Virus record (IMG/VR): IMGVR_UViG_3300017528_000567
Location: 124,001 to 188,000 of that record
DNA: 64,000 nucleotides
Strand: one strand, 5' to 3'
This document shows, piece after piece, positions 34,803 to 47,942 of the stretch (position 1 is its first letter; the number at the start of each line of letters is the position of its first letter). The translations under genes and the position numbers were made by a program. A model generated the notes under the pieces. That model was given only the letters and a program-made list of their open reading frames with translations. It was not told the origin of the DNA and searched no databases.

Positions 34803-36796
34803 AGCTTCACCTCGCCTTGGCCAAACATGATCGTGACGTCCCGGGGAGTTTCAGTAGCTTTGACATCGATCACGATGTCGTTCTGCATCTGGAACTCATC
34901 CACCATCGAAGCCCCGTTGTTCACGAGCTCCGCGTAGGCGATTGACGTCGAGCTACCAGACGCCAGGACGGCGCGCTGCTGCGCCGTCTTGTCCATGTAG
35001 GGCGGCTCGCTGACCAGCGGCTTGTTGATTTTCGAGCAATGCCCAGTCTTCACCTGGTGCACACAGCTCATGCACTTCGAGCCGTACTTGAGGTAGGGCA
35101 CCCCGCGCGAGCCATGAAGGCGGCTCGCCTCATCGCAGCCCTTGCCGTAATCGTCATACACAGACGGGTCGACGTAGTAGATGCCCTGCAGCCCCTGCTC
35201 GGCGAAGACCTTCCGGAGCTCGGCCTTGGACGCCTTGATATCGCGAGGGTCGAATCGAGCCTTGAGAGCAGTGGCAAGGTCACTGCCGTACAGGCCCTCG
35301 TTCATGTACCGGGAGGCCTGCTTGATGATCTCCTTGCGCGCCACACCGCTTGTCGCGTACTCGGGGGTCCCGCCATAGAAGCCGGTCATCGCTCCGAGAC
35401 GCACGGGGGCACTTGCCGCCCACCCAGCGGAGACTCGAACAACTTGATGAATTGCCTTCAGCGCCTGACTTGGGGTGCTCCCCCAGCTCGCCGCAGTCCT
35501 TGTGCTCACATTCGGCAACCGACCAGCCGTGCGATGCTCCAGCAGGACGGCGTCGACCGTTTCCTGGGTGAGAATATCCGCGGCTTGTTTCACCAGCGGC
35601 TTGCCGTAGAGCAGGCAGCGGGTCTTGTTGTAGATGCACGACCCACACTTCGCGCCGGCCACGATTGCCCGGACCGTCGGGTTGTGCTTCGCCAGGAAAT
35701 CAGCGCCCTCGTGACAATCTTGGAAGCTGGCCTGCTTCGAGTAGATCACGCCGTAGAGGCCCGATTCTTTGAGAACGGGCGCCCAATGAGGGCTCGTGCG
35801 AACCAGCAGACTTTCGTCGAATGCCAGCCTGAGAGAAGAAGCGAGCTCAGCGTGCGAGAGGCCCTTCACCATCTCACGGTGGAGAAAATCGAGCACGGGC
35901 TTGGCTTCAACTGCCAACTGCTCCTGAGCCCGCTTGCCCTTCAAGAGCGACGTGGCCTCGATCAACTGCTCACGCGCTTGCACCGGGGTTGGCAGCGCCG
36001 GCTTGTGCTGGCTGATGCCCTGTCCGGCGTATGCCCCGGATCGTTCGGGCCGCGGGGCCAGGTAAGCCGCCCTGATGCGCTCTTTGGCAGAGACCGCACC
36101 CGAGGCCTGGATGATGCGACCACGGGCCGCCTGAGACTGCTCAACGGCGCTCGCGAGCTTGTCCGTGTACGGCACCTCAGTGACGAGCTCGCGCCCGAAC
36201 TGGCTGCAATGCCCAGCGCCACCTGGCTGCGCCGTGTGGCAATGTGGGCATCCGCCGCACGCGGTCTTCGAGAGAACGTACCGAGCGGTGGGGGCGTGCT
36301 TGTTGATGAACGAGCTGGCCTTTGCCGGGTCGAGCCCGGCGAAGTCTTCCGCCACAACGTAGTAGCGGCCCACAAGCCCGCGCTCCTGCAGCACCGAGGC
36401 CAACACCGTACGGTGCTCCTGCAGGGTCTCCGCTGGGTAGCGGCGTCGGAGCTCGCTGCGCATCCGCCCGAGGTCATCTGACTGCAGCAGAGCCAGGCGC
36501 GCGATCTTGGCAATCTCTTCGGCCCTCGAGCGAAGCTTGCCGTGCGCCTGAGACATATCACCCATCGTATGGGGATCGTTGATCCCAACATTGGGCACCG
36601 GCACCACGTTCGGGACCAAGAATGCCGTGGCCGACTCACCCTGACGGTCCCACAGAGCTTCCAGGTCCGGTCCGATGTTGAGGTTCTGCTTAGGCAACAC
36701 CGCTTCCGCGCGATACTTCTCTTCATCAACGTCAAGCCAGTCGAGATCGGCAACCGACGCATCTTTCAGAAAATCACTTAGGTCTAGTTCAGCCAT
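34799..36796 (-). CDS. Head-module protein with three Cys-rich repeated modules
   Basis: CGGC..C, CGSC..C and CMSC..C, each followed by (E/P)LV and preceded by GLxGxxY. Confidence 0.75.
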   Translation of the reverse strand: MAELDLSDFLKDASVADLDWLDVDEEKYRAEAVLPKQNLNIGPDLEALWDRQGESATAFLVPNVVPVPNVGINDPHTMGDMSQAHGKLRSRAEEIAKIARLALLQSDDLGRMRSELRRRYPAETLQEHRTVLASVLQERGLVGRYYVVAEDFAGLDPAKASSFINKHAPTARYVLSKTACGGCPHCHTAQPGGAGHCSQFGRELVTEVPYTDKLASAVEQSQAARGRIIQASGAVSAKERIRAAYLAPRPERSGAYAGQGISQHKPALPTPVQAREQLIEATSLLKGKRAQEQLAVEAKPVLDFLHREMVKGLSHAELASSLRLAFDESLLVRTSPHWAPVLKESGLYGVIYSKQASFQDCHEGADFLAKHNPTVRAIVAGAKCGSCIYNKTRCLLYGKPLVKQAADILTQETVDAVLLEHRTAGRLPNVSTRTAASWGSTPSQALKAIHQVVRVSAGWAASAPVRLGAMTGFYGGTPEYATSGVARKEIIKQASRYMNEGLYGSDLATALKARFDPRDIKASKAELRKVFAEQGLQGIYYVDPSVYDDYGKGCDEASRLHGSRGVPYLKYGSKCMSCVHQVKTGHCSKINKPLVSEPPYMDKTAQQRAVLASGSSTSIAYAELVNNGASMVDEFQMQNDIVIDVKATETPRDVTIMFGQGEVKL

Positions 36797-38709
36797 TACC
36801 GCTCTCCGTCCTTCTGATTGATGTATGGCCCCTCATCGTCCCGTTGGTACAAGGGATCCGGACGCATATTGCGGGTTGAATGGTCCCACTTCACGTAAGG
36901 TTGATTCTGCTCGTGCCGGTAACCAAGGCCAGGTTGAACATCCATTGAATGGTCGTACGAGGCATCAGCCTCCGAAGGCAGCTCAGAGTCTGCAAACATG
37001 TGCTCGCGATAATGCGCGGGCCGCGGTGTTACAGGTCTAGGTTGACCTGGAAAAGCCTGGTCCGGCATCTTGGAGGAACCGACGTTGCTCGGTCCCACAT
37101 TCACCGGATTCGAGCCCTTGTCGCCGCTCCGGTAATAGTCAGATCTGGCAACAGGAGGCTGACCATCGTTAGGCAAATGCGACTGGCCTCTATGCGCTTG
37201 CCGGTTGCTCCGGCCCATCTCCATCTCGATAGACGGCGTTGTGTCGCTTTCATCATCGTGCAGCTTGCCGCCCGGATCGCTCGGCAACTTGGACGATGGT
37301 CCAAAGACGCCCTTTCCATCAGGGTCCTTTTCACCGTAGCCGCCCGCCCCTTGGCCATGAGCATCATCGCCGTCGCCGTACCCGATACCAAAATCCCAAC
37401 CTTCTGTTGGCGTGTTGTCGGTATAACGGCCTGGCATCCTGGAGTCGGCGCTCTTCAACAGGCCCCGCTGATCCATCAGCATGAAACCGTCGAGGTCCTT
37501 TTTCGTAAGCTTGTACTTCCGCGCACCGTGGGTGTTCAGGATCTGAGCTGGCGGTCGCCCCTTCTTGAGCAAATCCACGATGCCCCGAATCGTGTTCATG
37601 TCCGGGGCATCCACGTTCATTCGCGGGTCGTAGTCGTAGTCAGTAAGCGATGGCCAGGCCGCTGACTTGTCTGGCAGCGCATTCTCCCACTCAGACTCGT
37701 AAAGGTAGTCCTTCCCAGCCCCGTCCTCCCTGCTCCACTCATCCTTCATGGACGGCGGTTCATCCTGGTTGTAGGAGCCGAATGGACCCGTTTGGTCGGT
37801 ATCTGCGCGGTCCATGTGCTGGACTCGAGGCCCGCCCGACATGGTTTCCACAGGGATCGAGGAATTCGCGAACCGCTTCGCGATACGTGCGATCATGGGG
37901 TCAACCCAGGATGCGGTCTTTACCTTGGCAGACTCGCTGTCAGGCATGTCCCGCGCGTCGGGGACCCCAGCCCCTTCTTCATCCTCGTCTTCTTCATCCT
38001 CGTCTTCATCATCCTCATCGTCATCCTTCTTTTTCATGGAGGGTGGCGGAGGTGGAGGGTGAAAGCGCTGGTCGGACTCGGGGTTATTGACTTCACCCTC
38101 TTCTAGCTCGGCTTGCTCGCCCGATTCCTCCGCCTTGTTCAAACCATCCTCTACGAAGGATTCATCTTCGGGGTTCTCTAAGACGCGCTCGGCGTCCCCA
38201 ACCAAGCGCTCGACACCCTCGACGTCTTGGCTTTCGAGCTCGCCCAACTTTGGGCGCCAGTGCGGTGCGTGGAGCTCATCGTGGATCGTGTCCGAAACAG
38301 ATGAGATGGCCTCGCACGCATCGTGCAGCGCGCCACGAACATCCTTGACTGACATCACATAGCCCCGCCCGCCAATGAGCCCATCGGGAGAGATGGTCGC
38401 CGACTTCAACTTCGTAAACTCTCGGTGCGCCGACATCGCATGCCCGAGCGAGATACTCAGCGTCCATAGCATCCGAGCCAGTGGCTTCAGGGCTTGGGGG
38501 TCGTAGTCGAAATCTTTCGGGATGGCCCGCCGCATCGTGGTCGAGGGACCGCTCGACGCCCTATCCGGACGCTCCGGTTGCGCTGCCACACCTGCGGGCT
38601 CAACGTCATCCTCCAGCCCAGCCAGTCGCATCTGGTGCTTGAGGTTCATTCGTTCGGACGCACGCACGTGGCGCCGTAGAGCCGCTATGGTCTTCTTGCG
38701 AGATTCCAC
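36796..38709 (-). CDS. Acidic, largely disordered probable internal head protein (637 aa)
   Basis: D/E/G/P-rich; KTAS, KSAA and KSAD motifs; RIAKRF tag. Confidence 0.7.
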   Translation of the reverse strand: MESRKKTIAALRRHVRASERMNLKHQMRLAGLEDDVEPAGVAAQPERPDRASSGPSTTMRRAIPKDFDYDPQALKPLARMLWTLSISLGHAMSAHREFTKLKSATISPDGLIGGRGYVMSVKDVRGALHDACEAISSVSDTIHDELHAPHWRPKLGELESQDVEGVERLVGDAERVLENPEDESFVEDGLNKAEESGEQAELEEGEVNNPESDQRFHPPPPPPSMKKKDDDEDDEDEDEEDEDEEGAGVPDARDMPDSESAKVKTASWVDPMIARIAKRFANSSIPVETMSGGPRVQHMDRADTDQTGPFGSYNQDEPPSMKDEWSREDGAGKDYLYESEWENALPDKSAAWPSLTDYDYDPRMNVDAPDMNTIRGIVDLLKKGRPPAQILNTHGARKYKLTKKDLDGFMLMDQRGLLKSADSRMPGRYTDNTPTEGWDFGIGYGDGDDAHGQGAGGYGEKDPDGKGVFGPSSKLPSDPGGKLHDDESDTTPSIEMEMGRSNRQAHRGQSHLPNDGQPPVARSDYYRSGDKGSNPVNVGPSNVGSSKMPDQAFPGQPRPVTPRPAHYREHMFADSELPSEADASYDHSMDVQPGLGYRHEQNQPYVKWDHSTRNMRPDPLYQRDDEGPYINQKDGER

Positions 38710-39954: not shown

Positions 39955-40581
39955 CTACAGACAGCGGTCGAGGCCGCGATTGCTCCACTGCGGAAGACTC
40001 ACGGCGCGTAGGATGTTGAACTTCTTTGATGAGATCGAGGTGAAGATCTTTTCGTACGGCCGAAAGAGCTCGTTGTGCGCCGCCGCGATCTTGAGCTTAC
40101 TGACCGCCTTGAAGAAGCGGTGCCGGACGCGCCCCTGGGTTAGCTGGAGGCTGTTGGCAACCTCCGACTGACAGGTGGTCTGCCACATGCCGACCAGGAT
40201 ATCGACGTCGATCTGCTCGAACAGCTCGCAGAGGTCTTCGCGCAGCTCCTCTTCCGTGACAGCGGGGATGGCCAGCAAGAACTTCAGCCGCTGGATCCCC
40301 CTGTCTAGGCGGTAGCTAATCGCCGCTTGCGTCACATCAAAGATCTCAGCGATGTCCGCTTGCCGCTTCTTGCACACATAGTACAGGTAGATCAAATCGG
40401 CTTCGCGCTCAGGGATCCGGTCCAACAGCGGAGCGATCCTTGTCTCATAGTCGCCGCTAGAGAACAACGCGGAGACATCCTCCGACTCGGGCGGCGCCTC
40501 GTCATCTAAGAGCACCGCGGGAGCCGCGAAGCGATTGGCCAACTCGGCGGGGTCGACAGGGATCACATAACCGTTGGACAT
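39955..40581 (-). CDS. Sigma70 region-4-like protein with two tandem HTH units
   Basis: LDRIPEREADLIYLYY..RQADIAEIFDVTQAAISYRL and CQSEVANSLQLTQGRVRHR; no region-2 motif seen; GAGGAGG upstream. Confidence 0.75.
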   Translation of the reverse strand: MSNGYVIPVDPAELANRFAAPAVLLDDEAPPESEDVSALFSSGDYETRIAPLLDRIPEREADLIYLYYVCKKRQADIAEIFDVTQAAISYRLDRGIQRLKFLLAIPAVTEEELREDLCELFEQIDVDILVGMWQTTCQSEVANSLQLTQGRVRHRFFKAVSKLKIAAAHNELFRPYEKIFTSISSKKFNILRAVSLPQWSNRGLDRCL

Positions 40582-40602: not shown

Positions 40603-42309
40603 TCACATGCCCACGTCGGACACGGCTTCGGTGCGTCGTGACGCCTCGAAAAATGCCGTCAAGATTGGGTCCGGACGAATGTTCAGCGCCTTGATCCGTG
40701 CGCGGGCGGCCTCTTGATCTTTGTTTGGTTTGATTTGGCTGAATGGGACGTCGCATAGAGACATGAGCTCTACGTTCAGCAACACCTGCTTCTCACTAGC
40801 CCGAAGGCTCACGGCTTGCGTCTTGCTCAAGCCGGCGAGATTTGACTTGAAGAGACTGCTAACCGTTCCGTACGGCTTCAACGCCTTCGCGGCCGTCTTC
40901 AAGCCAAAGCCCGGCGCACCAGGGATATGGTCAGAAGTGTCCCCACTGATCGCGCGTAGCTGCACCATCGAGCGCGGCGGGACCCCATACTCAGCCTCGA
41001 CGGCAGCGGGATCGTACAACTTCTCTTTGCCGCCGCCCATGGCCGGGCACAGCTGATGCGTGAAGTCGTTGACCACCTGAAGTAGGTCTCGATCAGAGGT
41101 GATGATCAAGTTAGTCGCACCACTAAGCGGGCCTCGCACAAGAGCGGCCATCACGTCGTCAGCCTCCTCTTCAGCATTGAAGGCTTGATGCACACCCAGC
41201 ATTGGCAGAACCTCGCGTAACCAAGCCCAGCCAAAGGAGGGCGTCTCGGACCGTGGGATCCGGTTACCCTTGTACCCCACAAATATCGCTTTTCGACGTT
41301 GAGAGCTACCATCCCAACAAATATAGATAGAACACCGAGGAAATCGCTTGCGGTACGCAGCCACACTGCGCAGAAACCCGACGACCCCTCCAGTGCGTTG
41401 CCCCTGACTATCAGTCAGACCCGAGAGCCCCGGCGCCTCGGAGCACCGGATAAACAGTTGGGTCCCGTCAATGACCACATTTAATCCCGAGCTTTGTTGT
41501 TCCATAGGTGTAACCGGTTCCGAGTTCAGCCGATGTGACAGCGCCTCCAGGGTCCCAAGGGCGCGCGACTTTTCCACAAGGAGCGAGAGGTCTAGTACCG
41601 AGTAGAAAGCGTTGAACCAGCGGTACAGAGACACGCTCCGGTCAACCCAGCCATCTAGGCGGTAGACGGTCTCCGCCCGCTCCTTCAGCCCGTCCAGCTT
41701 ATTAGCCGGCCACTGGGAAACCTTGCGAACCGACTCAACCCAAGCCCCTATGCGCCGGACCCGTTCCCGATACGCCGTATCCGGCGACTTACACTCCAGC
41801 CGAAGGAAAGCTCTTGGCAACGTAACTAGTCGATCGGTCGACCTCAGGTGGATGTGCACCACAACCGAGTCTTGCTCCAGGATCTCCTCACGAACGGTCG
41901 CCTTGATATTCTTGTAGGGGCCGGAGATGATCGTCACCGCATCCCCGACCTCGATGCCTTGGTCCACCTCGACCGTGATCTGAGCTCGCAGAGTCTCGAT
42001 CTGGCCGTTGGTGACGGTCGCCAGCTTCTTCTCTCGCCGATTGCCCGTCACATGATAGAGCGGCGCCTGAACGTACTTCGTTTCTTCTAGCCGCAGATAG
42101 CAGTGGTCCGGATGTCTATGGCGAACGAACGCGTAGCCGTCTACCAGATACTTAAACTCCCGGATGGGTCCGCGTTCGACCACCGAGGCGGGTATGAAAA
42201 CCTCAGCATCCCTGATGTGGTGTCGAATCGAGGCTGCGATTGCAGCCGGGTCCGCACCCTCTGCCTTGGAGGTAAGTTCAAGGACCACCCATTGAATGTC
42301 ACAACTCAT
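40603..42309 (-). CDS. Fusion of NusG-like (NGN+KOW) and 5'-3' exonuclease (FEN/PolI N-terminal) domains
   Basis: N-terminal WVVL..VFIP..DGYAFV and KOW motif VGDAVTIISGPYKNIKATV; C-terminal VIDG, CWDG, YKGNR, EADD, SDRD, GDTSD and GFGLKTA. Confidence 0.88.
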   Translation of the reverse strand: MSCDIQWVVLELTSKAEGADPAAIAASIRHHIRDAEVFIPASVVERGPIREFKYLVDGYAFVRHRHPDHCYLRLEETKYVQAPLYHVTGNRREKKLATVTNGQIETLRAQITVEVDQGIEVGDAVTIISGPYKNIKATVREEILEQDSVVVHIHLRSTDRLVTLPRAFLRLECKSPDTAYRERVRRIGAWVESVRKVSQWPANKLDGLKERAETVYRLDGWVDRSVSLYRWFNAFYSVLDLSLLVEKSRALGTLEALSHRLNSEPVTPMEQQSSGLNVVIDGTQLFIRCSEAPGLSGLTDSQGQRTGGVVGFLRSVAAYRKRFPRCSIYICWDGSSQRRKAIFVGYKGNRIPRSETPSFGWAWLREVLPMLGVHQAFNAEEEADDVMAALVRGPLSGATNLIITSDRDLLQVVNDFTHQLCPAMGGGKEKLYDPAAVEAEYGVPPRSMVQLRAISGDTSDHIPGAPGFGLKTAAKALKPYGTVSSLFKSNLAGLSKTQAVSLRASEKQVLLNVELMSLCDVPFSQIKPNKDQEAARARIKALNIRPDPILTAFFEASRRTEAVSDVGM

Positions 42310-42324
42310 TCTTAGTGATCGGCT

Positions 42325-42331
42325 CTACACC
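42325..42331 (-). promoter_or_regulatory. GGTGTAG element 15 nt upstream of the NusG-exonuclease ATG
   Basis: GGTGTAG-AGCCGATCACTAAGA-ATG. Confidence 0.5.
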
Positions 42332-42336
42332 TGAAC

Positions 42337-43773
42337 CTAAGAATCTGGATTCCAAACTGTTCTTTTTCGATATAGCCGCATTAACTCTCCTCGCCACTCG
42401 GCTGGCTCCAGGAGCTGGTGATTACCCCGTGGCTTGGACTGAGCCGGCGCTGGCGCCTGATTGGCGCGTGAACGGGGCGCCTGTTGCTCAGATACCGTCT
42501 TCTCCATGGCCGAATTGGGCGTCGGGTCTGGAAAGCCAAGCCCAAACTCTGCGCCTACAGGTGCAATCGGCATTGCTCCAGAACCAGTACTTTTACGGGG
42601 CGAGCTCGGCGCGACCGGGGGCAAAGACTCGACAGGAGCTCGCTCTGGAACGGTCTCTTGCGACGGCGGCGGCGCCACTGCAATTTGAGGTGCCTGACTA
42701 GCGAACACCACTGGCGGCGGTGCCATCTCCGGGGGCAAGTTCCTAGCGTTCTGAGAGAAAGCCAGAACGTCTAGCTCTAGAGCTAGACGGGTAACACTGC
42801 GATGCCCCAAAAACCACTTGGCGAATCTGACCACATGGTCCTGATACTTATCGTAGACCTGCTCGGCTAAGGTCTTGTCGACGTAGGCGAGATCGGCATA
42901 CCAGCCATGAGCCATCCGATAGGTGTTCATGGCTGCTTCAGCCAGACCGGCTGCAACCTCATCTGCGGGCGTCGCCTCGCACGCTTGACGAACCAAATCG
43001 ATGGCCTTGAGCGGGTTGTCGAGGCTCAGGAGGATCTGATAGTACAGGGTTACCACAGAGAGATTCAGATACTCTCTGACACTTGCTACGGTGATCGGCC
43101 CGAGCTGCGCCATCATCTCGAGATTGTTGAGCACGTTGCGGACGTGCCCCCCGGCCCGATCGATGATGATCAAGACAGCGTCATCCTCGTGCTGGACCCC
43201 CTGCTCGTTGAGCACCATCTTCATGCGGGGCAACACGTCGTCCCGCGTCACCTTCTTGATCGTGTACTCCTCACACCTTGAGCGTATCGCACCACGGATC
43301 TTTTCCGCCTCCGTGGTGCAGAGCATTGCGACCATCTTCTTTTCTTCGATGGGCTTCAACAGCACATCTTGAGCCGCGTGGTGCATACGCTGGCACTCGT
43401 CGATCAGATAGATCCGCTTCGGGGCGTTTGGGAGCATGTACGGGAGCTCCTCGACCAAGCTCCGCATGCTGTCCGTTGATCCGCTGCTTGCGGCGTCGCG
43501 CTCAGTGAACGCCTCAGACTGCTCTTGCAGGATAGCTTTGCAGCTGTCGCATGCCCCGCACGGCTCGGGGTCGGCCTTGTCCAAATCCTGGCAAAGCATC
43601 GCCATCGCGTGGATACGGCTCAGGGTCGTTTTTCCCTGGCCGTACCCACCCGCGAAGATGTAGCTAGTCTCAAACGCCGTACCCCTACTGATCCGAGTTT
43701 TGAGAAGCCGCACACTGCCGGCCTGACCCAGAACGTCCGAATACTTGCGTGGCCGATACAAAATATCCCACAC
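42337..43773 (-). CDS. dnaX: DNA polymerase III gamma/tau clamp-loader subunit
   Basis: LYRPRKYSDVLGQ, Walker A GYGQGKTT, zinc motif PCGACDSC, DAAS, IDE, IRSRC. Confidence 0.92.
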   Translation of the reverse strand: MWDILYRPRKYSDVLGQAGSVRLLKTRISRGTAFETSYIFAGGYGQGKTTLSRIHAMAMLCQDLDKADPEPCGACDSCKAILQEQSEAFTERDAASSGSTDSMRSLVEELPYMLPNAPKRIYLIDECQRMHHAAQDVLLKPIEEKKMVAMLCTTEAEKIRGAIRSRCEEYTIKKVTRDDVLPRMKMVLNEQGVQHEDDAVLIIIDRAGGHVRNVLNNLEMMAQLGPITVASVREYLNLSVVTLYYQILLSLDNPLKAIDLVRQACEATPADEVAAGLAEAAMNTYRMAHGWYADLAYVDKTLAEQVYDKYQDHVVRFAKWFLGHRSVTRLALELDVLAFSQNARNLPPEMAPPPVVFASQAPQIAVAPPPSQETVPERAPVESLPPVAPSSPRKSTGSGAMPIAPVGAEFGLGFPDPTPNSAMEKTVSEQQAPRSRANQAPAPAQSKPRGNHQLLEPAEWRGELMRLYRKRTVWNPDS

Positions 43774-46033: not shown

Positions 46034-46698
46034 GACTTGCCCAACCTCTGCAGATCCACATGGGGGAGGCCCTCGGAACCGACACGCTCGGTAGCCCGAT
46101 ATGCAACGTTGGCGTGCTCCAAGAACGCAGGCTTGTGCGTGACCAAGAGAATAGAGAAGCCTGTCTTCTCGGCCAGCCCTTTCAGGAATGCCCCGGTCTG
46201 GTCAATGTAATCATCCGAGACGGCCGCCAAAGTCTCATCGAGCACGAGTAGCGGCCATTTTCCTAGGCGGGTCATGGTTAGGACTTTCAGAATCAGTGAG
46301 GCCACACTGCTCGGCCCACCCCCAAAAGCCTCCAGGGGGTGAGCTCTGATCGACACGCGCTTGTGGTCCTGCCGAAGGTAGAAATCGATGGCCACCTTGT
46401 TGTAGCGCTGCTGGACCTCTGCCTCGAACACCATCGTCTGATCGTCAAAGACTGCTCTCAGGCCCTCCGTGACCACCATTTCAATCGACCTGACATGTGC
46501 CATGACGAGCATGTCCATCAAGGACCGGAACAGCTCGCTCACCTTGGCAAGGACATCGAGCCTACGCGTGAGCTCGCCAACGTCCTTGCTCTTGGCCTCT
46601 CTGTCCTGCAGCAGTCTCCGGCGAAGCGTCTGGTGAGCGACAGCCGCTTGCCGCACTTCGATCAATCGATCCCGGGTGCGAACCTGGTCACTCGACAT
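46030..46698 (-). CDS. SbcC/Rad50 C-terminal half (ABC-ATPase)
   Basis: Signature-like FGGG, Walker B/D-loop LLVLDETLAAVS, H-loop LLVTH; short coiled coil. Confidence 0.85.
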   Translation of the reverse strand: MSSDQVRTRDRLIEVRQAAVAHQTLRRRLLQDREAKSKDVGELTRRLDVLAKVSELFRSLMDMLVMAHVRSIEMVVTEGLRAVFDDQTMVFEAEVQQRYNKVAIDFYLRQDHKRVSIRAHPLEAFGGGPSSVASLILKVLTMTRLGKWPLLVLDETLAAVSDDYIDQTGAFLKGLAEKTGFSILLVTHKPAFLEHANVAYRATERVGSEGLPHVDLQRLGKS

Positions 46699-47942
46699 TC
46701 ATACGCCCCCTTAGGTGGGTACTCCGTGTCTGCTGGCGGGTTATCGCTTAGGCCTCCGACGACCACGCCATCCTCACTCAGCAGGAAGCCATCGATCGTT
46801 CTGAACATGAAACGGTCCTTGGGCCGGCGCTCGTCAGCAGGGATCACCTTGATCCTGAACTCCACCTTGTCGCCGCGAATCCCCTCAAAAAGATGCAGCA
46901 TCTGGTTCACGTTTACGTTCATCGCCAGAGGCTCGGAGACCTTGACCTCGATCTTCTCCGTGGGCACCGGGTCAGAGGACAGCGTGTTGCTCTCCTCCGC
47001 ACTCGATAACCTGATGACCCCCGTAGCTGGATCAAAATGCATGCGGATCTTCGTCTTGGTCTTGTCCTTGTCCTTCGCCAAGCTGTCTCGCATGTACTTG
47101 AGCTGCGACCCGATCTGGTCACGGGCAACCCGGACGACCACCTCATCGGTCTTGGCGTAGTAGCTGAATTTCTTGTACTCGATCGTGTGCCGTGGCCAAC
47201 CGAGCACGTCGCCCCGCCCATTGATCATGTAGACCTTGGTGTCGGTCTGGTACGTCGAGACGTTCCCCGTGGAGCGGCCCAAGAAGGACTCGATCAAGCC
47301 CAGGTGCTGGGCTGGCAAGGACAGGTCCTTGTCCATGAAGGCCGGGCACTGCACGTAACAGATCTCTTTGCTGTTGGACGCGAGCATGTAGCCGTTCGCC
47401 CGTGCGAGCTCGGGGTCAGCGTTGCCAAAGATTCGAATCGTTTTGAAAACGTCCTGGTCAAGCACGTCCCCTGACTTAGGCAAAAAAGACTTTGCCAACC
47501 CGAGCCCGAACTGAAGGATCTTGATCGAGAACTCCTTCGGAGGCACCGACTCCTGCGCAGCGGCGATATCCCTCTCGAACATGTGGGTGCTTCGTGGGTC
47601 AAACGAGACCCGCTCATTAGAGCCCGACTCGCCGAACGTGTACTTGACCTTGCAAGCACCGTTCTCTTCAGTGGCCTTGAAGTTGATCGACCCAGAGATA
47701 TGACCCAACCCCTTGATGGCCTCAGAGGGTAGGATGAAGGCACCTTCGCCAGTTACATCAAAGATCGGGAATGACGAGCGCGCCTCGTGCTTGCCATCTC
47801 GCGAGTACACATCGCAGGTGTCCCGACGAACCATCATGAGATACCCGCCGCCCGTCTGCGGGGTGACTTGGGGGGCAACGATTGAGGCGATCCCGATCGC
47901 CCGGTTCAGAGCCGATGCGTCAACTGTGAATGTGATTTCCAT
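46662..47942 (-). CDS. dnaN: DNA polymerase III beta sliding clamp (divergent)
   Basis: N-terminus MEITFTVDASALNRAI..DVYSRDG..EGAFILP follows the DnaN pattern; late segment AMNVNVNQMLHLF..VEF; clamp-loader genes nearby. Confidence 0.65.
   Translation of the reverse strand: MEITFTVDASALNRAIGIASIVAPQVTPQTGGGYLMMVRRDTCDVYSRDGKHEARSSFPIFDVTGEGAFILPSEAIKGLGHISGSINFKATEENGACKVKYTFGESGSNERVSFDPRSTHMFERDIAAAQESVPPKEFSIKILQFGLGLAKSFLPKSGDVLDQDVFKTIRIFGNADPELARANGYMLASNSKEICYVQCPAFMDKDLSLPAQHLGLIESFLGRSTGNVSTYQTDTKVYMINGRGDVLGWPRHTIEYKKFSYYAKTDEVVVRVARDQIGSQLKYMRDSLAKDKDKTKTKIRMHFDPATGVIRLSSAEESNTLSSDPVPTEKIEVKVSEPLAMNVNVNQMLHLFEGIRGDKVEFRIKVIPADERRPKDRFMFRTIDGFLLSEDGVVVGGLSDNPPADTEYPPKGAYECRVTRFAPGID

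What the first reader, a model, noticed from the sequence alone, without database searches (positions are those of the whole stretch)
40603..42309. NusG/Spt5-family factor fused to a 5'-3' exonuclease with intact catalytic motifs
Seen: one uninterrupted ORF with NGN+KOW (about 41800-42309), a ~100-aa helical linker and a FEN/PolI-type nuclease (about 40680-41483) retaining all the acidic motifs (DG, WDG, EADD, SDRD, GDTSD). Established: NusG clamps onto elongating RNA polymerase; this nuclease family removes primers and flaps and degrades RNA in hybrids; 5'-3' exonucleases act as termination torpedoes (eukaryotic Xrn2, Bacillus RNase J1). I do not know this fusion from characterised proteins. 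Inference: a nuclease tethered to RNA polymerase, for torpedo termination or host shut-off, R-loop removal, or resolving transcription-replication conflicts.
Basis: partly seen in the sequence, partly recalled or inferred. Interest (0 to 1): 0.82.

Follow-up and report, generated by a model that had tools for sequence, protein, structure and literature searches.

The report
Huge-phage NusG paralog fused to flap nuclease
A giant soil phage makes one protein that joins a NusG-type RNA-polymerase rider to an intact flap/primer-removing DNA nuclease, a conserved but uncharacterised combination that probably links phage transcription to DNA replication.

Summary
Window 40603-42309 (-) is one 568-aa ORF: NGN+KOW (1-175), three long helices (176-261), a disordered hinge (263-271), then a PolI/FEN 5' nuclease (277-545) with every catalytic carboxylate. 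Independent contigs from four studies show no indels, and dN/dS is 0.02-0.19 in every segment, so it is not an assembly or lost-stop artefact. M269 is not conserved. The element is a huge soil phage (434-kb contig).

At least 55 representatives at 50% identity carry the fusion. It is absent from cellular genomes apart from three tiny MAG contigs.

- The constant partner of this NusG-like module is a sigma-region-4 protein encoded directly downstream. Rare fusions join the module to a full sigma factor or to that sigma4 protein.
- The nuclease is an add-on. A sister clade has a bare 165-190-aa NusG-like gene in the same slot.
- Several lineages split the gene exactly at the hinge into overlapping genes.

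The NusG loop that contacts Rho is replaced. My best reading is a phage-specific NusG paralog that rides RNA polymerase and carries the replication flap nuclease to transcription-replication encounters. Torpedo termination is unlikely. RNAP binding is untested.

The parts
40603..42309 (-). Whole ORF, 568 aa plus stop: NusG-like module, helical linker, hinge, FEN nuclease, C-terminal motif
41980..42309 (-). NGN domain (residues 1-110). Carries the conserved W7-V8 strand, P40, and the L55/G58-Y59-A60-F61 strand that matches the NusG 'FPGYVFV' strand
   Evidence: dN/dS 0.048
41785..41958 (-). KOW beta-barrel (residues 118-175). Has G-D-x-V-x-I-x-x-G-P-Y. The loop L155-R156-S157 replaces the NusG I-F-G Rho-contact loop. 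Ends with the family signature L164-P165-R166-x-F-L
   Evidence: dN/dS 0.017 for codons 111-175
41524..41784 (-). Linker of three long helices (residues 176-262). Variable in sequence and length among orthologs, but under purifying selection
   Evidence: dN/dS 0.13; it stays with the NusG half in split lineages
41482..41523 (-). Disordered hinge (residues 263-276) containing the non-conserved M269. This is the position where split lineages are cut
40984..41481 (-). FEN/PolI 5' nuclease N-terminal (PIN-like) domain, residues 277-442. Carboxylates D281, D333, E382, D384, D385, D406, D408; arch residues Y346, K347, R350
40690..40983 (-). FEN H3TH/SAM-fold domain, residues 443-540, with D457, D460 and the GFGLKTA duplex-binding turn
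40648..40671 (-). Conserved C-terminal peptide [DE]-x-[ILV]-L-x-A-F-F (residues 547-554). Candidate sliding-clamp-binding motif, untested
   Evidence: F553 in 109/116, F554 in 105/116 sequences
39955..40581 (-). Sigma-region-4-like two-HTH protein (208 aa), 21 nt downstream. The invariant neighbour of the NusG-like module in all lineages examined
   Evidence: contexts
42337..43773 (-). DnaX-like clamp-loader ATPase, 27 nt upstream. Conserved upstream neighbour
46662..47942 (-). Divergent beta-type sliding clamp (426 aa). Possible partner of the C-terminal motif

Best explanation
The gene encodes a huge-phage-specific paralog of the transcription elongation factor NusG that carries the phage's flap/primer-removal nuclease as covalent cargo.

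Proposed mechanism: the NGN domain sits on the beta' clamp helices of the host RNA polymerase that the phage redirects with its own sigma-like proteins. The KOW domain has lost the Rho-contacting loop of housekeeping NusG and carries a new invariant surface. Like RfaH, LoaP and UpxY, the module would then keep polymerase elongating through the very long, single-strand-oriented phage operons and would exclude host NusG. A three-helix spacer and a flexible hinge hold a catalytically complete PolI/FEN 5' nuclease within reach of the upstream DNA and RNA-exit side of the elongation complex. There the nuclease would remove RNA from RNA:DNA hybrids and cut 5' flaps where phage replisomes meet transcribing polymerases: R-loops, and transcripts used as primers after co-directional collisions. 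The same nuclease also serves ordinary Okazaki-fragment maturation.

Shown here: the domain identities, the intact active site, the reality and conservation of the fusion, its phage restriction, the linkage to sigma-type proteins, the loss of the Rho-loop residues, and the interchange of fused and split states.

Inferred: RNAP binding, antitermination, and the substrates and timing of the nuclease.
For: Domains.

Active site: all nine carboxylates, arch Y346/K347/R350 and the H3TH motif are invariant in 61 homologs.

The fusion is real: contigs from four studies show no indels; strain variants are 11 synonymous to 3 non-synonymous; dN/dS against an 86%-identical ortholog is 0.05 for NGN, 0.02 for KOW, 0.13 for the linker and 0.09 for FEN.

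Conservation: more than 110 clusters at 90% identity and 55 representatives at 50% identity carry the fusion. It lies on contigs of up to 549 kb with the same gene order.

Link to RNA polymerase: a sigma-r4 gene lies directly downstream in nine of nine loci with enough sequence (window, L001, L002, L005, L006, L008, L009, L011, L092). There is a sigma70-NusG fusion, P0178, and a NusG-FEN-sigma4 fusion, P0093.

Link between the NusG module and FEN beyond adjacency: fused and split states interconvert at several places in the tree. Splits fall exactly at the hinge, the two genes overlap by 4-26 nt, and the helical linker stays on the NusG half. In the two stand-alone loci sampled (L008, L011) there is no FEN gene at this position, and the 165-190-aa proteins have no linker.

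Rho loop: NusG I164-F165-G166 contact Rho (PMC7593976). The family has invariant L155-R156-S157 at the aligned positions.

Geometry: the NGN binds the upstream face of the elongation complex, and the KOW lies near the upstream duplex and RNA exit (bioRxiv 10.1101/324400).

Precedent for a nuclease docked on a KOW: FttA-Spt5.

Context: the gene lies between the replication genes and the late structural genes. All are on one strand, and the 36.5-48.5 kb stretch scanned shows no excess of terminator-like sites.
Against: No direct test of RNAP binding, antitermination or nuclease substrate was possible. The host is unknown, and only 64 kb of a 434-kb genome was visible, so a phage-encoded RNAP cannot be excluded.

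The window protein's own NusG scores are far below curated cut-offs. The assignment rests on the family profile, the predicted structure and transitivity through relatives.

The nuclease is dispensable at this position in the sister clade and is a separate polypeptide in several lineages, so covalent tethering is not essential.

pTM of 0.55 gives no fixed inter-domain geometry.

FEN enzymes need a free 5' end, which a growing R-loop behind a polymerase does not obviously offer.
Confidence: 0.4

Rival explanations
1. Fusion of convenience. A phage NusG-type antiterminator and an ordinary replication flap nuclease are neighbouring genes in one operon and became joined by loss of a stop codon. 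The two halves work independently, and the join only secures co-expression.
For: The FEN gene is absent from this position in the two sampled loci of the sister clade. Several lineages have two genes. The hinge is disordered and the least constrained segment apart from the short C-terminal tail. pTM of 0.55 shows no fixed domain packing. The same operon also produced a read-through fusion with the next gene, P0093, which shows that such joins arise easily here.
Against: The fusion persists across at least 55 representatives at 50% identity, down to about 38% identity. The 90-190-aa helical linker is seen only where a FEN is present. It is under purifying selection (dN/dS 0.13) and stays on the NusG half in split lineages, whose genes overlap as is typical of subunits made in fixed ratio. 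A mere stop-loss join would not need such a linker.
Confidence: 0.27
2. Replisome adaptor. The NusG-like module does not bind RNA polymerase. It uses its KOW or NGN surface to dock the flap nuclease on a replication protein such as the clamp loader, primase, SSB or helicase.
For: The gene lies immediately after primase, metallopeptidase and clamp loader in every lineage. The KOW partner loop differs from the Rho/S10-binding loop of NusG and is invariant. KOW is the most constrained segment.
Against: The stand-alone form exists without any nuclease to dock. The module is fused to a complete sigma70-family factor in P0178, and a sigma-r4 gene always follows it. The NGN strand motifs that build the RNAP-binding face in NusG are conserved.
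Confidence: 0.1
3. Clamp-coupled late transcription. The protein bridges the phage sliding clamp (through the C-terminal FF peptide on the nuclease) and RNA polymerase (through the NGN domain). The sigma4-like partner holds the beta flap. Late genes would then be switched on only on replicating DNA, as in T4 with gp45, gp33 and gp55.
For: There is a conserved C-terminal [DE]x[ILV]LxAFF peptide. The phage has its own beta-type clamp and clamp loader nearby. The sigma4-like partner lacks region 2. The pair lies just upstream of the structural-gene block on the same strand. NGN and sigma region 2 use the same clamp-helix site (my own knowledge of Sevostyanova et al. 2008, cited within).
Against: Clamp binding is only a motif resemblance. 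The peptide has high model confidence up to residue 550 and may simply be part of the fold. Some split FENs have degenerate versions of the motif. The stand-alone clade has no FEN, and so no such peptide, yet keeps the sigma4 partner.
Confidence: 0.1
4. Torpedo terminator or host shut-off nuclease. The RNAP-tethered nuclease degrades nascent RNA 5'-3' to dislodge polymerase, or destroys host transcripts or DNA.
For: There is precedent for nucleases docked on the Spt5 KOW that terminate transcription: FttA and INTS11. The active site is intact.
Against: The nuclease belongs to the PolI/FEN family that works on duplex-flanked 5' flaps and hybrids, and its H3TH duplex-binding motif is intact. It has no similarity to XRN, RNase J or beta-CASP enzymes. 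NusG paralogs that have lost the Rho loop are antiterminators in all studied cases. A terminator riding every polymerase would be harmful on operons tens of kilobases long.
Confidence: 0.06

Closest known systems
Specialised NusG paralogs (RfaH, LoaP, UpxY, TaA)
   Same: Two-domain NGN+KOW factor encoded inside the long operon or mobile element it would serve. It has lost the Rho-contact loop residues of housekeeping NusG, as RfaH has. NCBIfam gives weak in-register hits to nusG, LoaP and UpxY.
   Different: It reaches none of the curated cut-offs of those families. It carries a helical linker of about 90 aa plus a 290-aa nuclease. AF2 predicts the KOW as a beta-barrel, with no RfaH-like helical state. 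The partner gene is a sigma4-like protein, not UpxZ or an ops or RNA element.
Bacterial and phage PolI-type 5' nucleases / FEN (Taq PolI 5' nuclease, M. smegmatis FenA, T5 D15, E. coli ExoIX)
   Same: Same fold: TM 0.78 to FenA, Foldseek E 4e-18. Same carboxylates, arch residues and H3TH. It lies in a replication module with clamp, clamp loader, primase and ligase.
   Different: None of the 50 top-ranked PDB or BFVD structural matches spans both an NGN-KOW module and the nuclease. No GenBank phage record matches more than the nuclease half.
Archaeal FttA-Spt4/5 and eukaryotic INTS11-Spt5 termination complexes
   Same: A nuclease is held at the elongation complex by the KOW domain of a NusG/Spt5 factor whose NGN sits on RNAP (PMC11616081).
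   Different: In those systems the link is non-covalent, the nuclease is a metallo-beta-lactamase/beta-CASP ribonuclease acting on single-stranded nascent RNA, and the outcome is termination. Here the link is covalent (or an overlapping gene pair), and the nuclease is a FEN-family DNA-structure enzyme.
T4 late-transcription coupling (gp45 clamp, gp33, gp55)
   Same: Phage-encoded partial sigma-like proteins and replication-clamp machinery are encoded together. There is a possible C-terminal hydrophobic clamp-binding peptide. The T4 system itself is cited from my own knowledge.
   Different: There is no sequence relationship to gp33 or gp55. The RNAP-binding element here is a NusG-type NGN domain, and clamp binding is untested.

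Membership tests
NusG/Spt5 family | N-terminal NGN domain (alpha/beta fold with the conserved strand motifs) | tested here: met
   With the family profile, the top nine PDB hits are all NusG, best E 4.9e-9, and one alignment covers NGN residues 4-140. Foldseek matches E. coli NusG 6gov_G at E 3e-10. Relatives P0191 and P0202 pass the Pfam PF02357 cut-off. Caveat: the window protein alone gets no Pfam NusG hit, and TIGR00922 scores only 29.8 bits against a cut-off of 135.7.
NusG/Spt5 family | KOW domain following the NGN | tested here: met
   The Pfam KOW hit covers residues 121-151 at 17.4 bits, below the 22.3 cut-off, but relatives pass it. AF2 gives a five-stranded barrel at 124-173. The profile aligns to NusG KOW structures 1nz9 and 2mi6.
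NusG/Spt5 family | NGN binds the RNAP clamp helices and gate loop | not testable with these tools
   Only indirect evidence is available: the conserved G58-Y59-A60-F61 strand, the sigma-factor fusions and the sigma4 neighbour.
Housekeeping NusG (equivalog TIGR00922) | KOW loop I164-F165-G166 that contacts Rho (and S10) | tested here: not met
   The aligned positions are an invariant L155-R156-S157. The loop's role is taken from PMC7593976. The score is far below the equivalog cut-off.
RfaH | Autoinhibited alpha-helical KOW state and an ops-binding NGN face | tested here: inconclusive
   AF2 predicts a beta-barrel KOW. PRK09014 RfaH is not among the hits for the window protein. A single predicted state cannot exclude fold switching.
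5'-3' exonuclease / FEN (PF02739 + PF01367) | Both Pfam domains above the curated cut-offs | tested here: met
   81.4 bits against a cut-off of 34.3, and 52.7 bits against 40.
5'-3' exonuclease / FEN (PF02739 + PF01367) | Complete set of metal-binding carboxylates | tested here: met
   D281, D333, E382, D384, D385, D406, D408, D457 and D460 align to Taq D18, D67, E117, D119, D120, D142, D144, D188 and D191, and are invariant in 61 homologs.
5'-3' exonuclease / FEN (PF02739 + PF01367) | Helical arch basic/aromatic residues and the H3TH duplex-binding motif | tested here: met
   Y346, K347 and R350 are invariant. G456, P463, G464 and K471 are invariant, and the segment aligns to Taq 'GIGEKTA'. 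The fold matches FenA with TM 0.78.
5'-3' exonuclease / FEN (PF02739 + PF01367) | Structure-specific 5' nuclease activity | not testable with these tools
   This needs an enzyme assay.
Torpedo exoribonucleases (Xrn2/Rat1, RNase J1, FttA/CPSF73) | XRN or metallo-beta-lactamase/beta-CASP catalytic domain | tested here: not met
   No such family appears in the Pfam, NCBIfam, PHROG, PDB or Foldseek results.
Clamp-binding replication proteins | Short C-terminal clamp-binding peptide | tested here: inconclusive
   A conserved [DE]x[ILV]LxAFF peptide lies at residues 547-554, and the phage has a beta-type clamp. This is a motif resemblance only, and the peptide is partly well ordered in the model.

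The most novel reading that the evidence does not exclude
The NusG-like module and the sigma4-like partner together act as a phage-made, two-piece replacement for sigma or NusG on host RNA polymerase. The NGN domain would take over the clamp-helix site from sigma region 2 at promoter escape, a hand-off made explicit in the sigma-NusG fusion P0178. The attached flap nuclease, through its C-terminal FF peptide, would hook this polymerase to the phage sliding clamp. That would give a direct physical coupling of transcription elongation to the replication fork in bacteria, built from a universal elongation factor.
Probability: 0.12. Interest if true: 0.85.

Novelty: new variant of a known kind. 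Interest (0 to 1): 0.62.

Why it matters
NusG/Spt5 is the only transcription factor conserved in all life. Its KOW domain is known as a docking platform for Rho, ribosomes and, in archaea and eukaryotes, termination nucleases.

A large, well-conserved phage family in which a NusG paralog is covalently or translationally coupled to a DNA flap nuclease, and genetically locked to a sigma-like partner, would be the first bacterial-world case of a NusG factor delivering a nuclease. It would offer a natural handle on how very large phage genomes reconcile simultaneous transcription and replication.

The family offers fused, split and nuclease-free natural variants, so the question is directly testable by biochemistry.

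Tried and rejected
Assembly or lost-stop artefact: rejected. Four independent studies' contigs show no indels, and one 37.9-kb contig spans the whole stretch. More than 110 orthologous clusters share the architecture, and dN/dS is low everywhere.

Internal start at M269: rejected as a conserved feature. The column is mostly R/A/S/N/T in 116 homologs, and I see no obvious Shine-Dalgarno sequence upstream by inspection.

Stop-codon recoding: the one interrupted ortholog (L004) has a single in-frame TGA in the linker, while the neighbouring genes called on that contig have lengths close to their window counterparts. I treat it as a point mutation or sequencing error.

GenBank phages: only the nuclease half matches, and there is no nucleotide match.

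Literature: six searches found no description of the fusion.

Promoter and terminator scan of 36.5-48.5 kb: no more sites than in shuffled sequence.

tRNA scan: none found.

PDB sequence search for the clamp-like protein: nothing found. Its identity rests on the language-model atlas search and a weak PHROG hit.

Names or accessions for NCBI-sourced homologs: none available.

Host inference from species genomes: uninformative. Only Pol I nuclease domains of diverse phyla matched, plus three tiny MAG contigs.

Tails of clade-A members with extra sequence: no Pfam domain.

The careful tree search did not finish, so the quick IQ-TREE tree with a midpoint root was used. Clade statements are therefore sides of well-supported branches, not rooted clades.
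Full report
**1. What is there**

Window 40603-42309 on the minus strand is a single 568-aa ORF with an ATG start.

The C-terminal half is an unambiguous PolI/FEN-type 5' nuclease. Pfam 5_3_exonuc_N covers residues 278-442 (E 8e-23) and 5_3_exonuc covers 443-523 (E 6e-14), both above the curated cut-offs. NCBIfam aligns residues 278-523 to the first 250 residues of DNA polymerase I. The best PDB sequence hit is the Taq polymerase 5' nuclease (E 8e-25). In that alignment D281, D333, E382, D384, D385, D406, D408, D457 and D460 face Taq D18, D67, E117, D119, D120, D142, D144, D188 and D191. All nine, plus the arch residues Y346, K347 and R350 and the H3TH glycines and lysine, are invariant in a 61-sequence family alignment.

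The N-terminal half is weak as a single sequence. KOW scores 17.4 bits against a cut-off of 22.3. TIGR00922 nusG gives E 4.7e-7, and LoaP and UpxY give about 1e-4, all far below their cut-offs. A profile of 46 family N-termini resolves this. The nine best PDB hits are all NusG, led by Thermotoga maritima NusG at E 4.9e-9 across both NGN and KOW, and another NusG aligns from residue 4 to 140.

An AlphaFold2 model built on the family alignment has mean pLDDT 88. It shows:
- an NGN-type alpha/beta domain (6-110);
- a five-stranded KOW barrel (124-173);
- three long helices (176-198, 202-236, 241-261);
- a disordered hinge (263-271);
- the nuclease.

Foldseek matches M. smegmatis FenA (E 4e-18, TM 0.78 on the target) and E. 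coli NusG from the lambda-N antitermination complex (E 3e-10). Relatives from the same N-terminal family pass Pfam's curated cut-offs for the NusG NGN and KOW domains.

**2. It is not an artefact**

Near-identical sequence is present in soil and rhizosphere metagenomes from at least four studies. One independent 37.9-kb contig covers the whole stretch with 20 substitutions and no gap. A 1.5-kb contig from another study bridges 41043-42573, which includes the whole linker and hinge. No indel or joint was seen in the gene.

Of the 14 strain variants inside the ORF, 11 are synonymous, including two in the linker and hinge. Against an 86%-identical ortholog (L092), dN/dS is 0.048 for NGN, 0.017 for KOW, 0.131 for the linker, 0.194 for the hinge and 0.086 for the nuclease.

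M269 is not conserved. The column is mostly R, A, S, N or T in 116 homologs, and I see no obvious ribosome-binding sequence before it by inspection.

**3. What element this is**

The window carries a terminase large subunit, portal and prohead protease. It also carries RecA, SbcCD-like proteins, a PD-(D/E)XK nuclease, a RecD2 helicase, an NAD-dependent ligase and a ribonucleotide reductase, with nearly every gene on the minus strand. The protein's own contig is 433,843 bp, and homologs lie on contigs of up to 549 kb. This is a huge phage of soil.

The ORF lies 27 nt after a DnaX-like clamp loader. Upstream of that are a phage metallopeptidase, a Toprim primase, an ATPase and a divergent beta-type clamp. 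The ORF lies 21 nt before a 208-aa protein with a sigma-70 region-4 domain. Promoter-like and terminator-like sites in 36.5-48.5 kb are no more frequent than in shuffled sequence.

**4. How widespread, and in what forms**

A word-indexed search of 5.8 billion proteins returned more than 110 clusters at 90% identity with the full-length architecture, down to about 38% identity. JGI's pipeline labels many of them '5'-3' exonuclease/transcription antitermination factor NusG'. In the family alignment the N-terminal module is as conserved as the nuclease, while the linker varies in sequence and length.

An exhaustive HMM search of 1.84 billion representatives with the N-terminal profile found 357 proteins at E <= 0.001. 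They fall into three forms:
- fusions of 540-690 aa;
- proteins of 280-390 aa with the same N-terminus and a tail but no nuclease;
- stand-alone proteins of 165-190 aa.

All three share a family signature at the end of the KOW domain, L-P-[RK]-x-F-L.

A quick maximum-likelihood tree (midpoint root, SH-aLRT support) separates two sides of a branch supported at 96. One side has 68 stand-alone or N-terminally extended proteins and no fusion. The other has all 55 fusions, with nuclease-less 'tail' forms nested among them at several places.

Contexts resolve these forms.
- In L005, L006 and L009 the NusG-plus-linker gene (312, 369 and 386 aa) overlaps by 4 to 26 nt, in another frame, a separate FEN gene (289-297 aa). 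That FEN gene begins four to six residues before the position of N277, exactly at the hinge. The sigma-r4 gene follows.
- In L008 and L011, from the other side of the tree, the same primase, metallopeptidase and clamp-loader series is followed by a bare 171- or 186-aa NusG-like gene and then the sigma-r4 gene. There is no nuclease and no linker.
- In L002 a 171-aa form overlaps a sigma-r4 gene.
- L004 is a fused gene interrupted by one in-frame TGA in the linker.

Two further fusions matter. P0178 is a complete sigma-70-family factor (regions 2 to 4) followed by this NusG-like module, which is 40% identical to the window's. P0093 reads from NusG-FEN into the sigma-r4 partner.

In 185,579 species-representative genomes the full-length form occurs only on three MAG contigs of 2.8-7 kb. 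Almost all other listed matches cover the nuclease half only. GenBank phages and the BFVD structure library hold separate FENs and separate NusG/RfaH-like proteins, and none of the listed hits spans both halves.

**5. Interpretation**

The invariant unit is the NusG-like module plus the sigma4-like protein. With the sigma fusions, this ties the module to RNA polymerase more strongly than homology alone does.

The partner has a sigma region-4 fold (TM about 0.8 to SigF, SigD and SigR region 4), a second helix-turn-helix and conserved termini, but no region 2.

In NusG the loop I164-F165-G166 contacts Rho, and RfaH lost it early (PMC7593976). At the aligned positions this family has invariant L155-R156-S157. 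The module is therefore a specialised paralog, not a housekeeping NusG. KOW is the most constrained part of the protein, so it presumably binds some other fixed partner. Specialised NusG paralogs characteristically serve long operons, and this phage has tens of kilobases of co-oriented genes.

The nuclease is an add-on of one clade, but it is not a casual one. The helical linker appears only together with the nuclease. It stays on the NusG half when the gene is split, the split genes overlap, and the fused state persists over deep divergence.

Structures of NusG and RfaH on elongation complexes place the NGN on the upstream face and the KOW near the upstream duplex and RNA exit (bioRxiv 10.1101/324400). 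A nuclease on a helical spacer there would reach the region where RNA:DNA hybrids form behind the polymerase.

I therefore favour a NusG paralog that rides polymerase and delivers the replication flap nuclease to transcription-replication encounters (confidence about 0.4). The main rival is a fusion of convenience between two independently acting proteins (about 0.27). That last idea fits poorly with a DNA-structure-specific FEN and with antiterminator-type NusG paralogs.

**6. Comparison with known systems, and novelty**

Both domains are members of known families. The membership tests on fold, motifs and catalytic residues are met, while RNAP binding and nuclease activity were not testable.

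The closest functional precedents are archaeal FttA and eukaryotic INTS11. Both are nucleases held on the Spt5 KOW at the RNA exit (PMC11616081). They are non-covalent, belong to another nuclease family, and terminate transcription.

The 2021 review of NusG diversity lists extra domains such as Thermotoga DII but no nuclease (PMC7819879), and six full-text searches found no description of this architecture. Automatic annotation has noticed the two COGs.

I rate it a new variant of a known kind, with interest about 0.6. It is real, conserved, phage-specific and experimentally tractable, but its mechanism is still inferred.

Noticed in passing
window 39955-40581 (-): A 208-aa sigma-region-4-like protein with a second HTH, a conserved N-terminal GYVIPVDPSELANRF motif, an acidic spacer and no sigma region 2. 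It is the invariant downstream neighbour of the NusG-like gene in every lineage examined.
   Followed up: partly
L007 3612-5237 (protein P0178): A complete sigma-70-family factor (regions 2-4) fused to the same NusG-like module, 40% identical to the window's. It lies on a different phage-like contig that carries Ku and a helicase.
   Followed up: partly
protein P0093 (840 aa, no locus fetched): NusG-FEN reads through into the complete sigma4 partner (63% identical to the window's), giving a triple fusion. It has four member sequences on one 6-kb contig, so it could be real or a sequencing error.
   Followed up: partly
L004 3207-5159: An ortholog interrupted by a single in-frame TGA inside the helical linker (...YVRL*DWLL...). 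Gene callers split it into 220-aa and 421-aa ORFs.
   Followed up: yes
L010 2414-3310 (protein P0184): A NusG-like module fused to a phage CI-repressor-type HTH, next to a resolvase. This is another effector attached to the same N-terminal family.
   Followed up: no
protein P0229 (3604 aa): A giant protein with nine separate matches to the NGN part of the N-terminal profile.
   Followed up: no
window 46662-47942 (-): A 426-aa divergent beta-type sliding clamp. Pfam and PDB sequence searches do not see it. Only a weak PHROG hit and the language-model atlas search recognise it.
   Followed up: partly
window 36796-38709 (-): A 637-aa protein with a proline run followed by a long Asp/Glu run, and no family hit in Pfam or PHROGs. 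A protein of similar size follows the module in related loci.
   Followed up: no
C-termini of divergent orthologs (for example P0141, P0144, P0148, P0162): A second short motif, G-F-[LVM]-K, at the extreme C-terminus after the FF motif. It is absent from the window protein.
   Followed up: no
L001 19974-21932; L005 16653-16939: In L001 the large gene downstream of the module carries an intein (Intein_splicing, LAGLIDADG_3) within an MJ0330_N-type protein. The corresponding gene in L005 shows only the MJ0330_N hit in the part fetched.
   Followed up: no
window 1-64000: Almost every long ORF is on the minus strand, and the windowed GC skew is negative in all but the first few bins (cumulative -1.9). 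This fits a single replication and transcription direction over at least about 60 kb. No tRNA genes were found.
   Followed up: no
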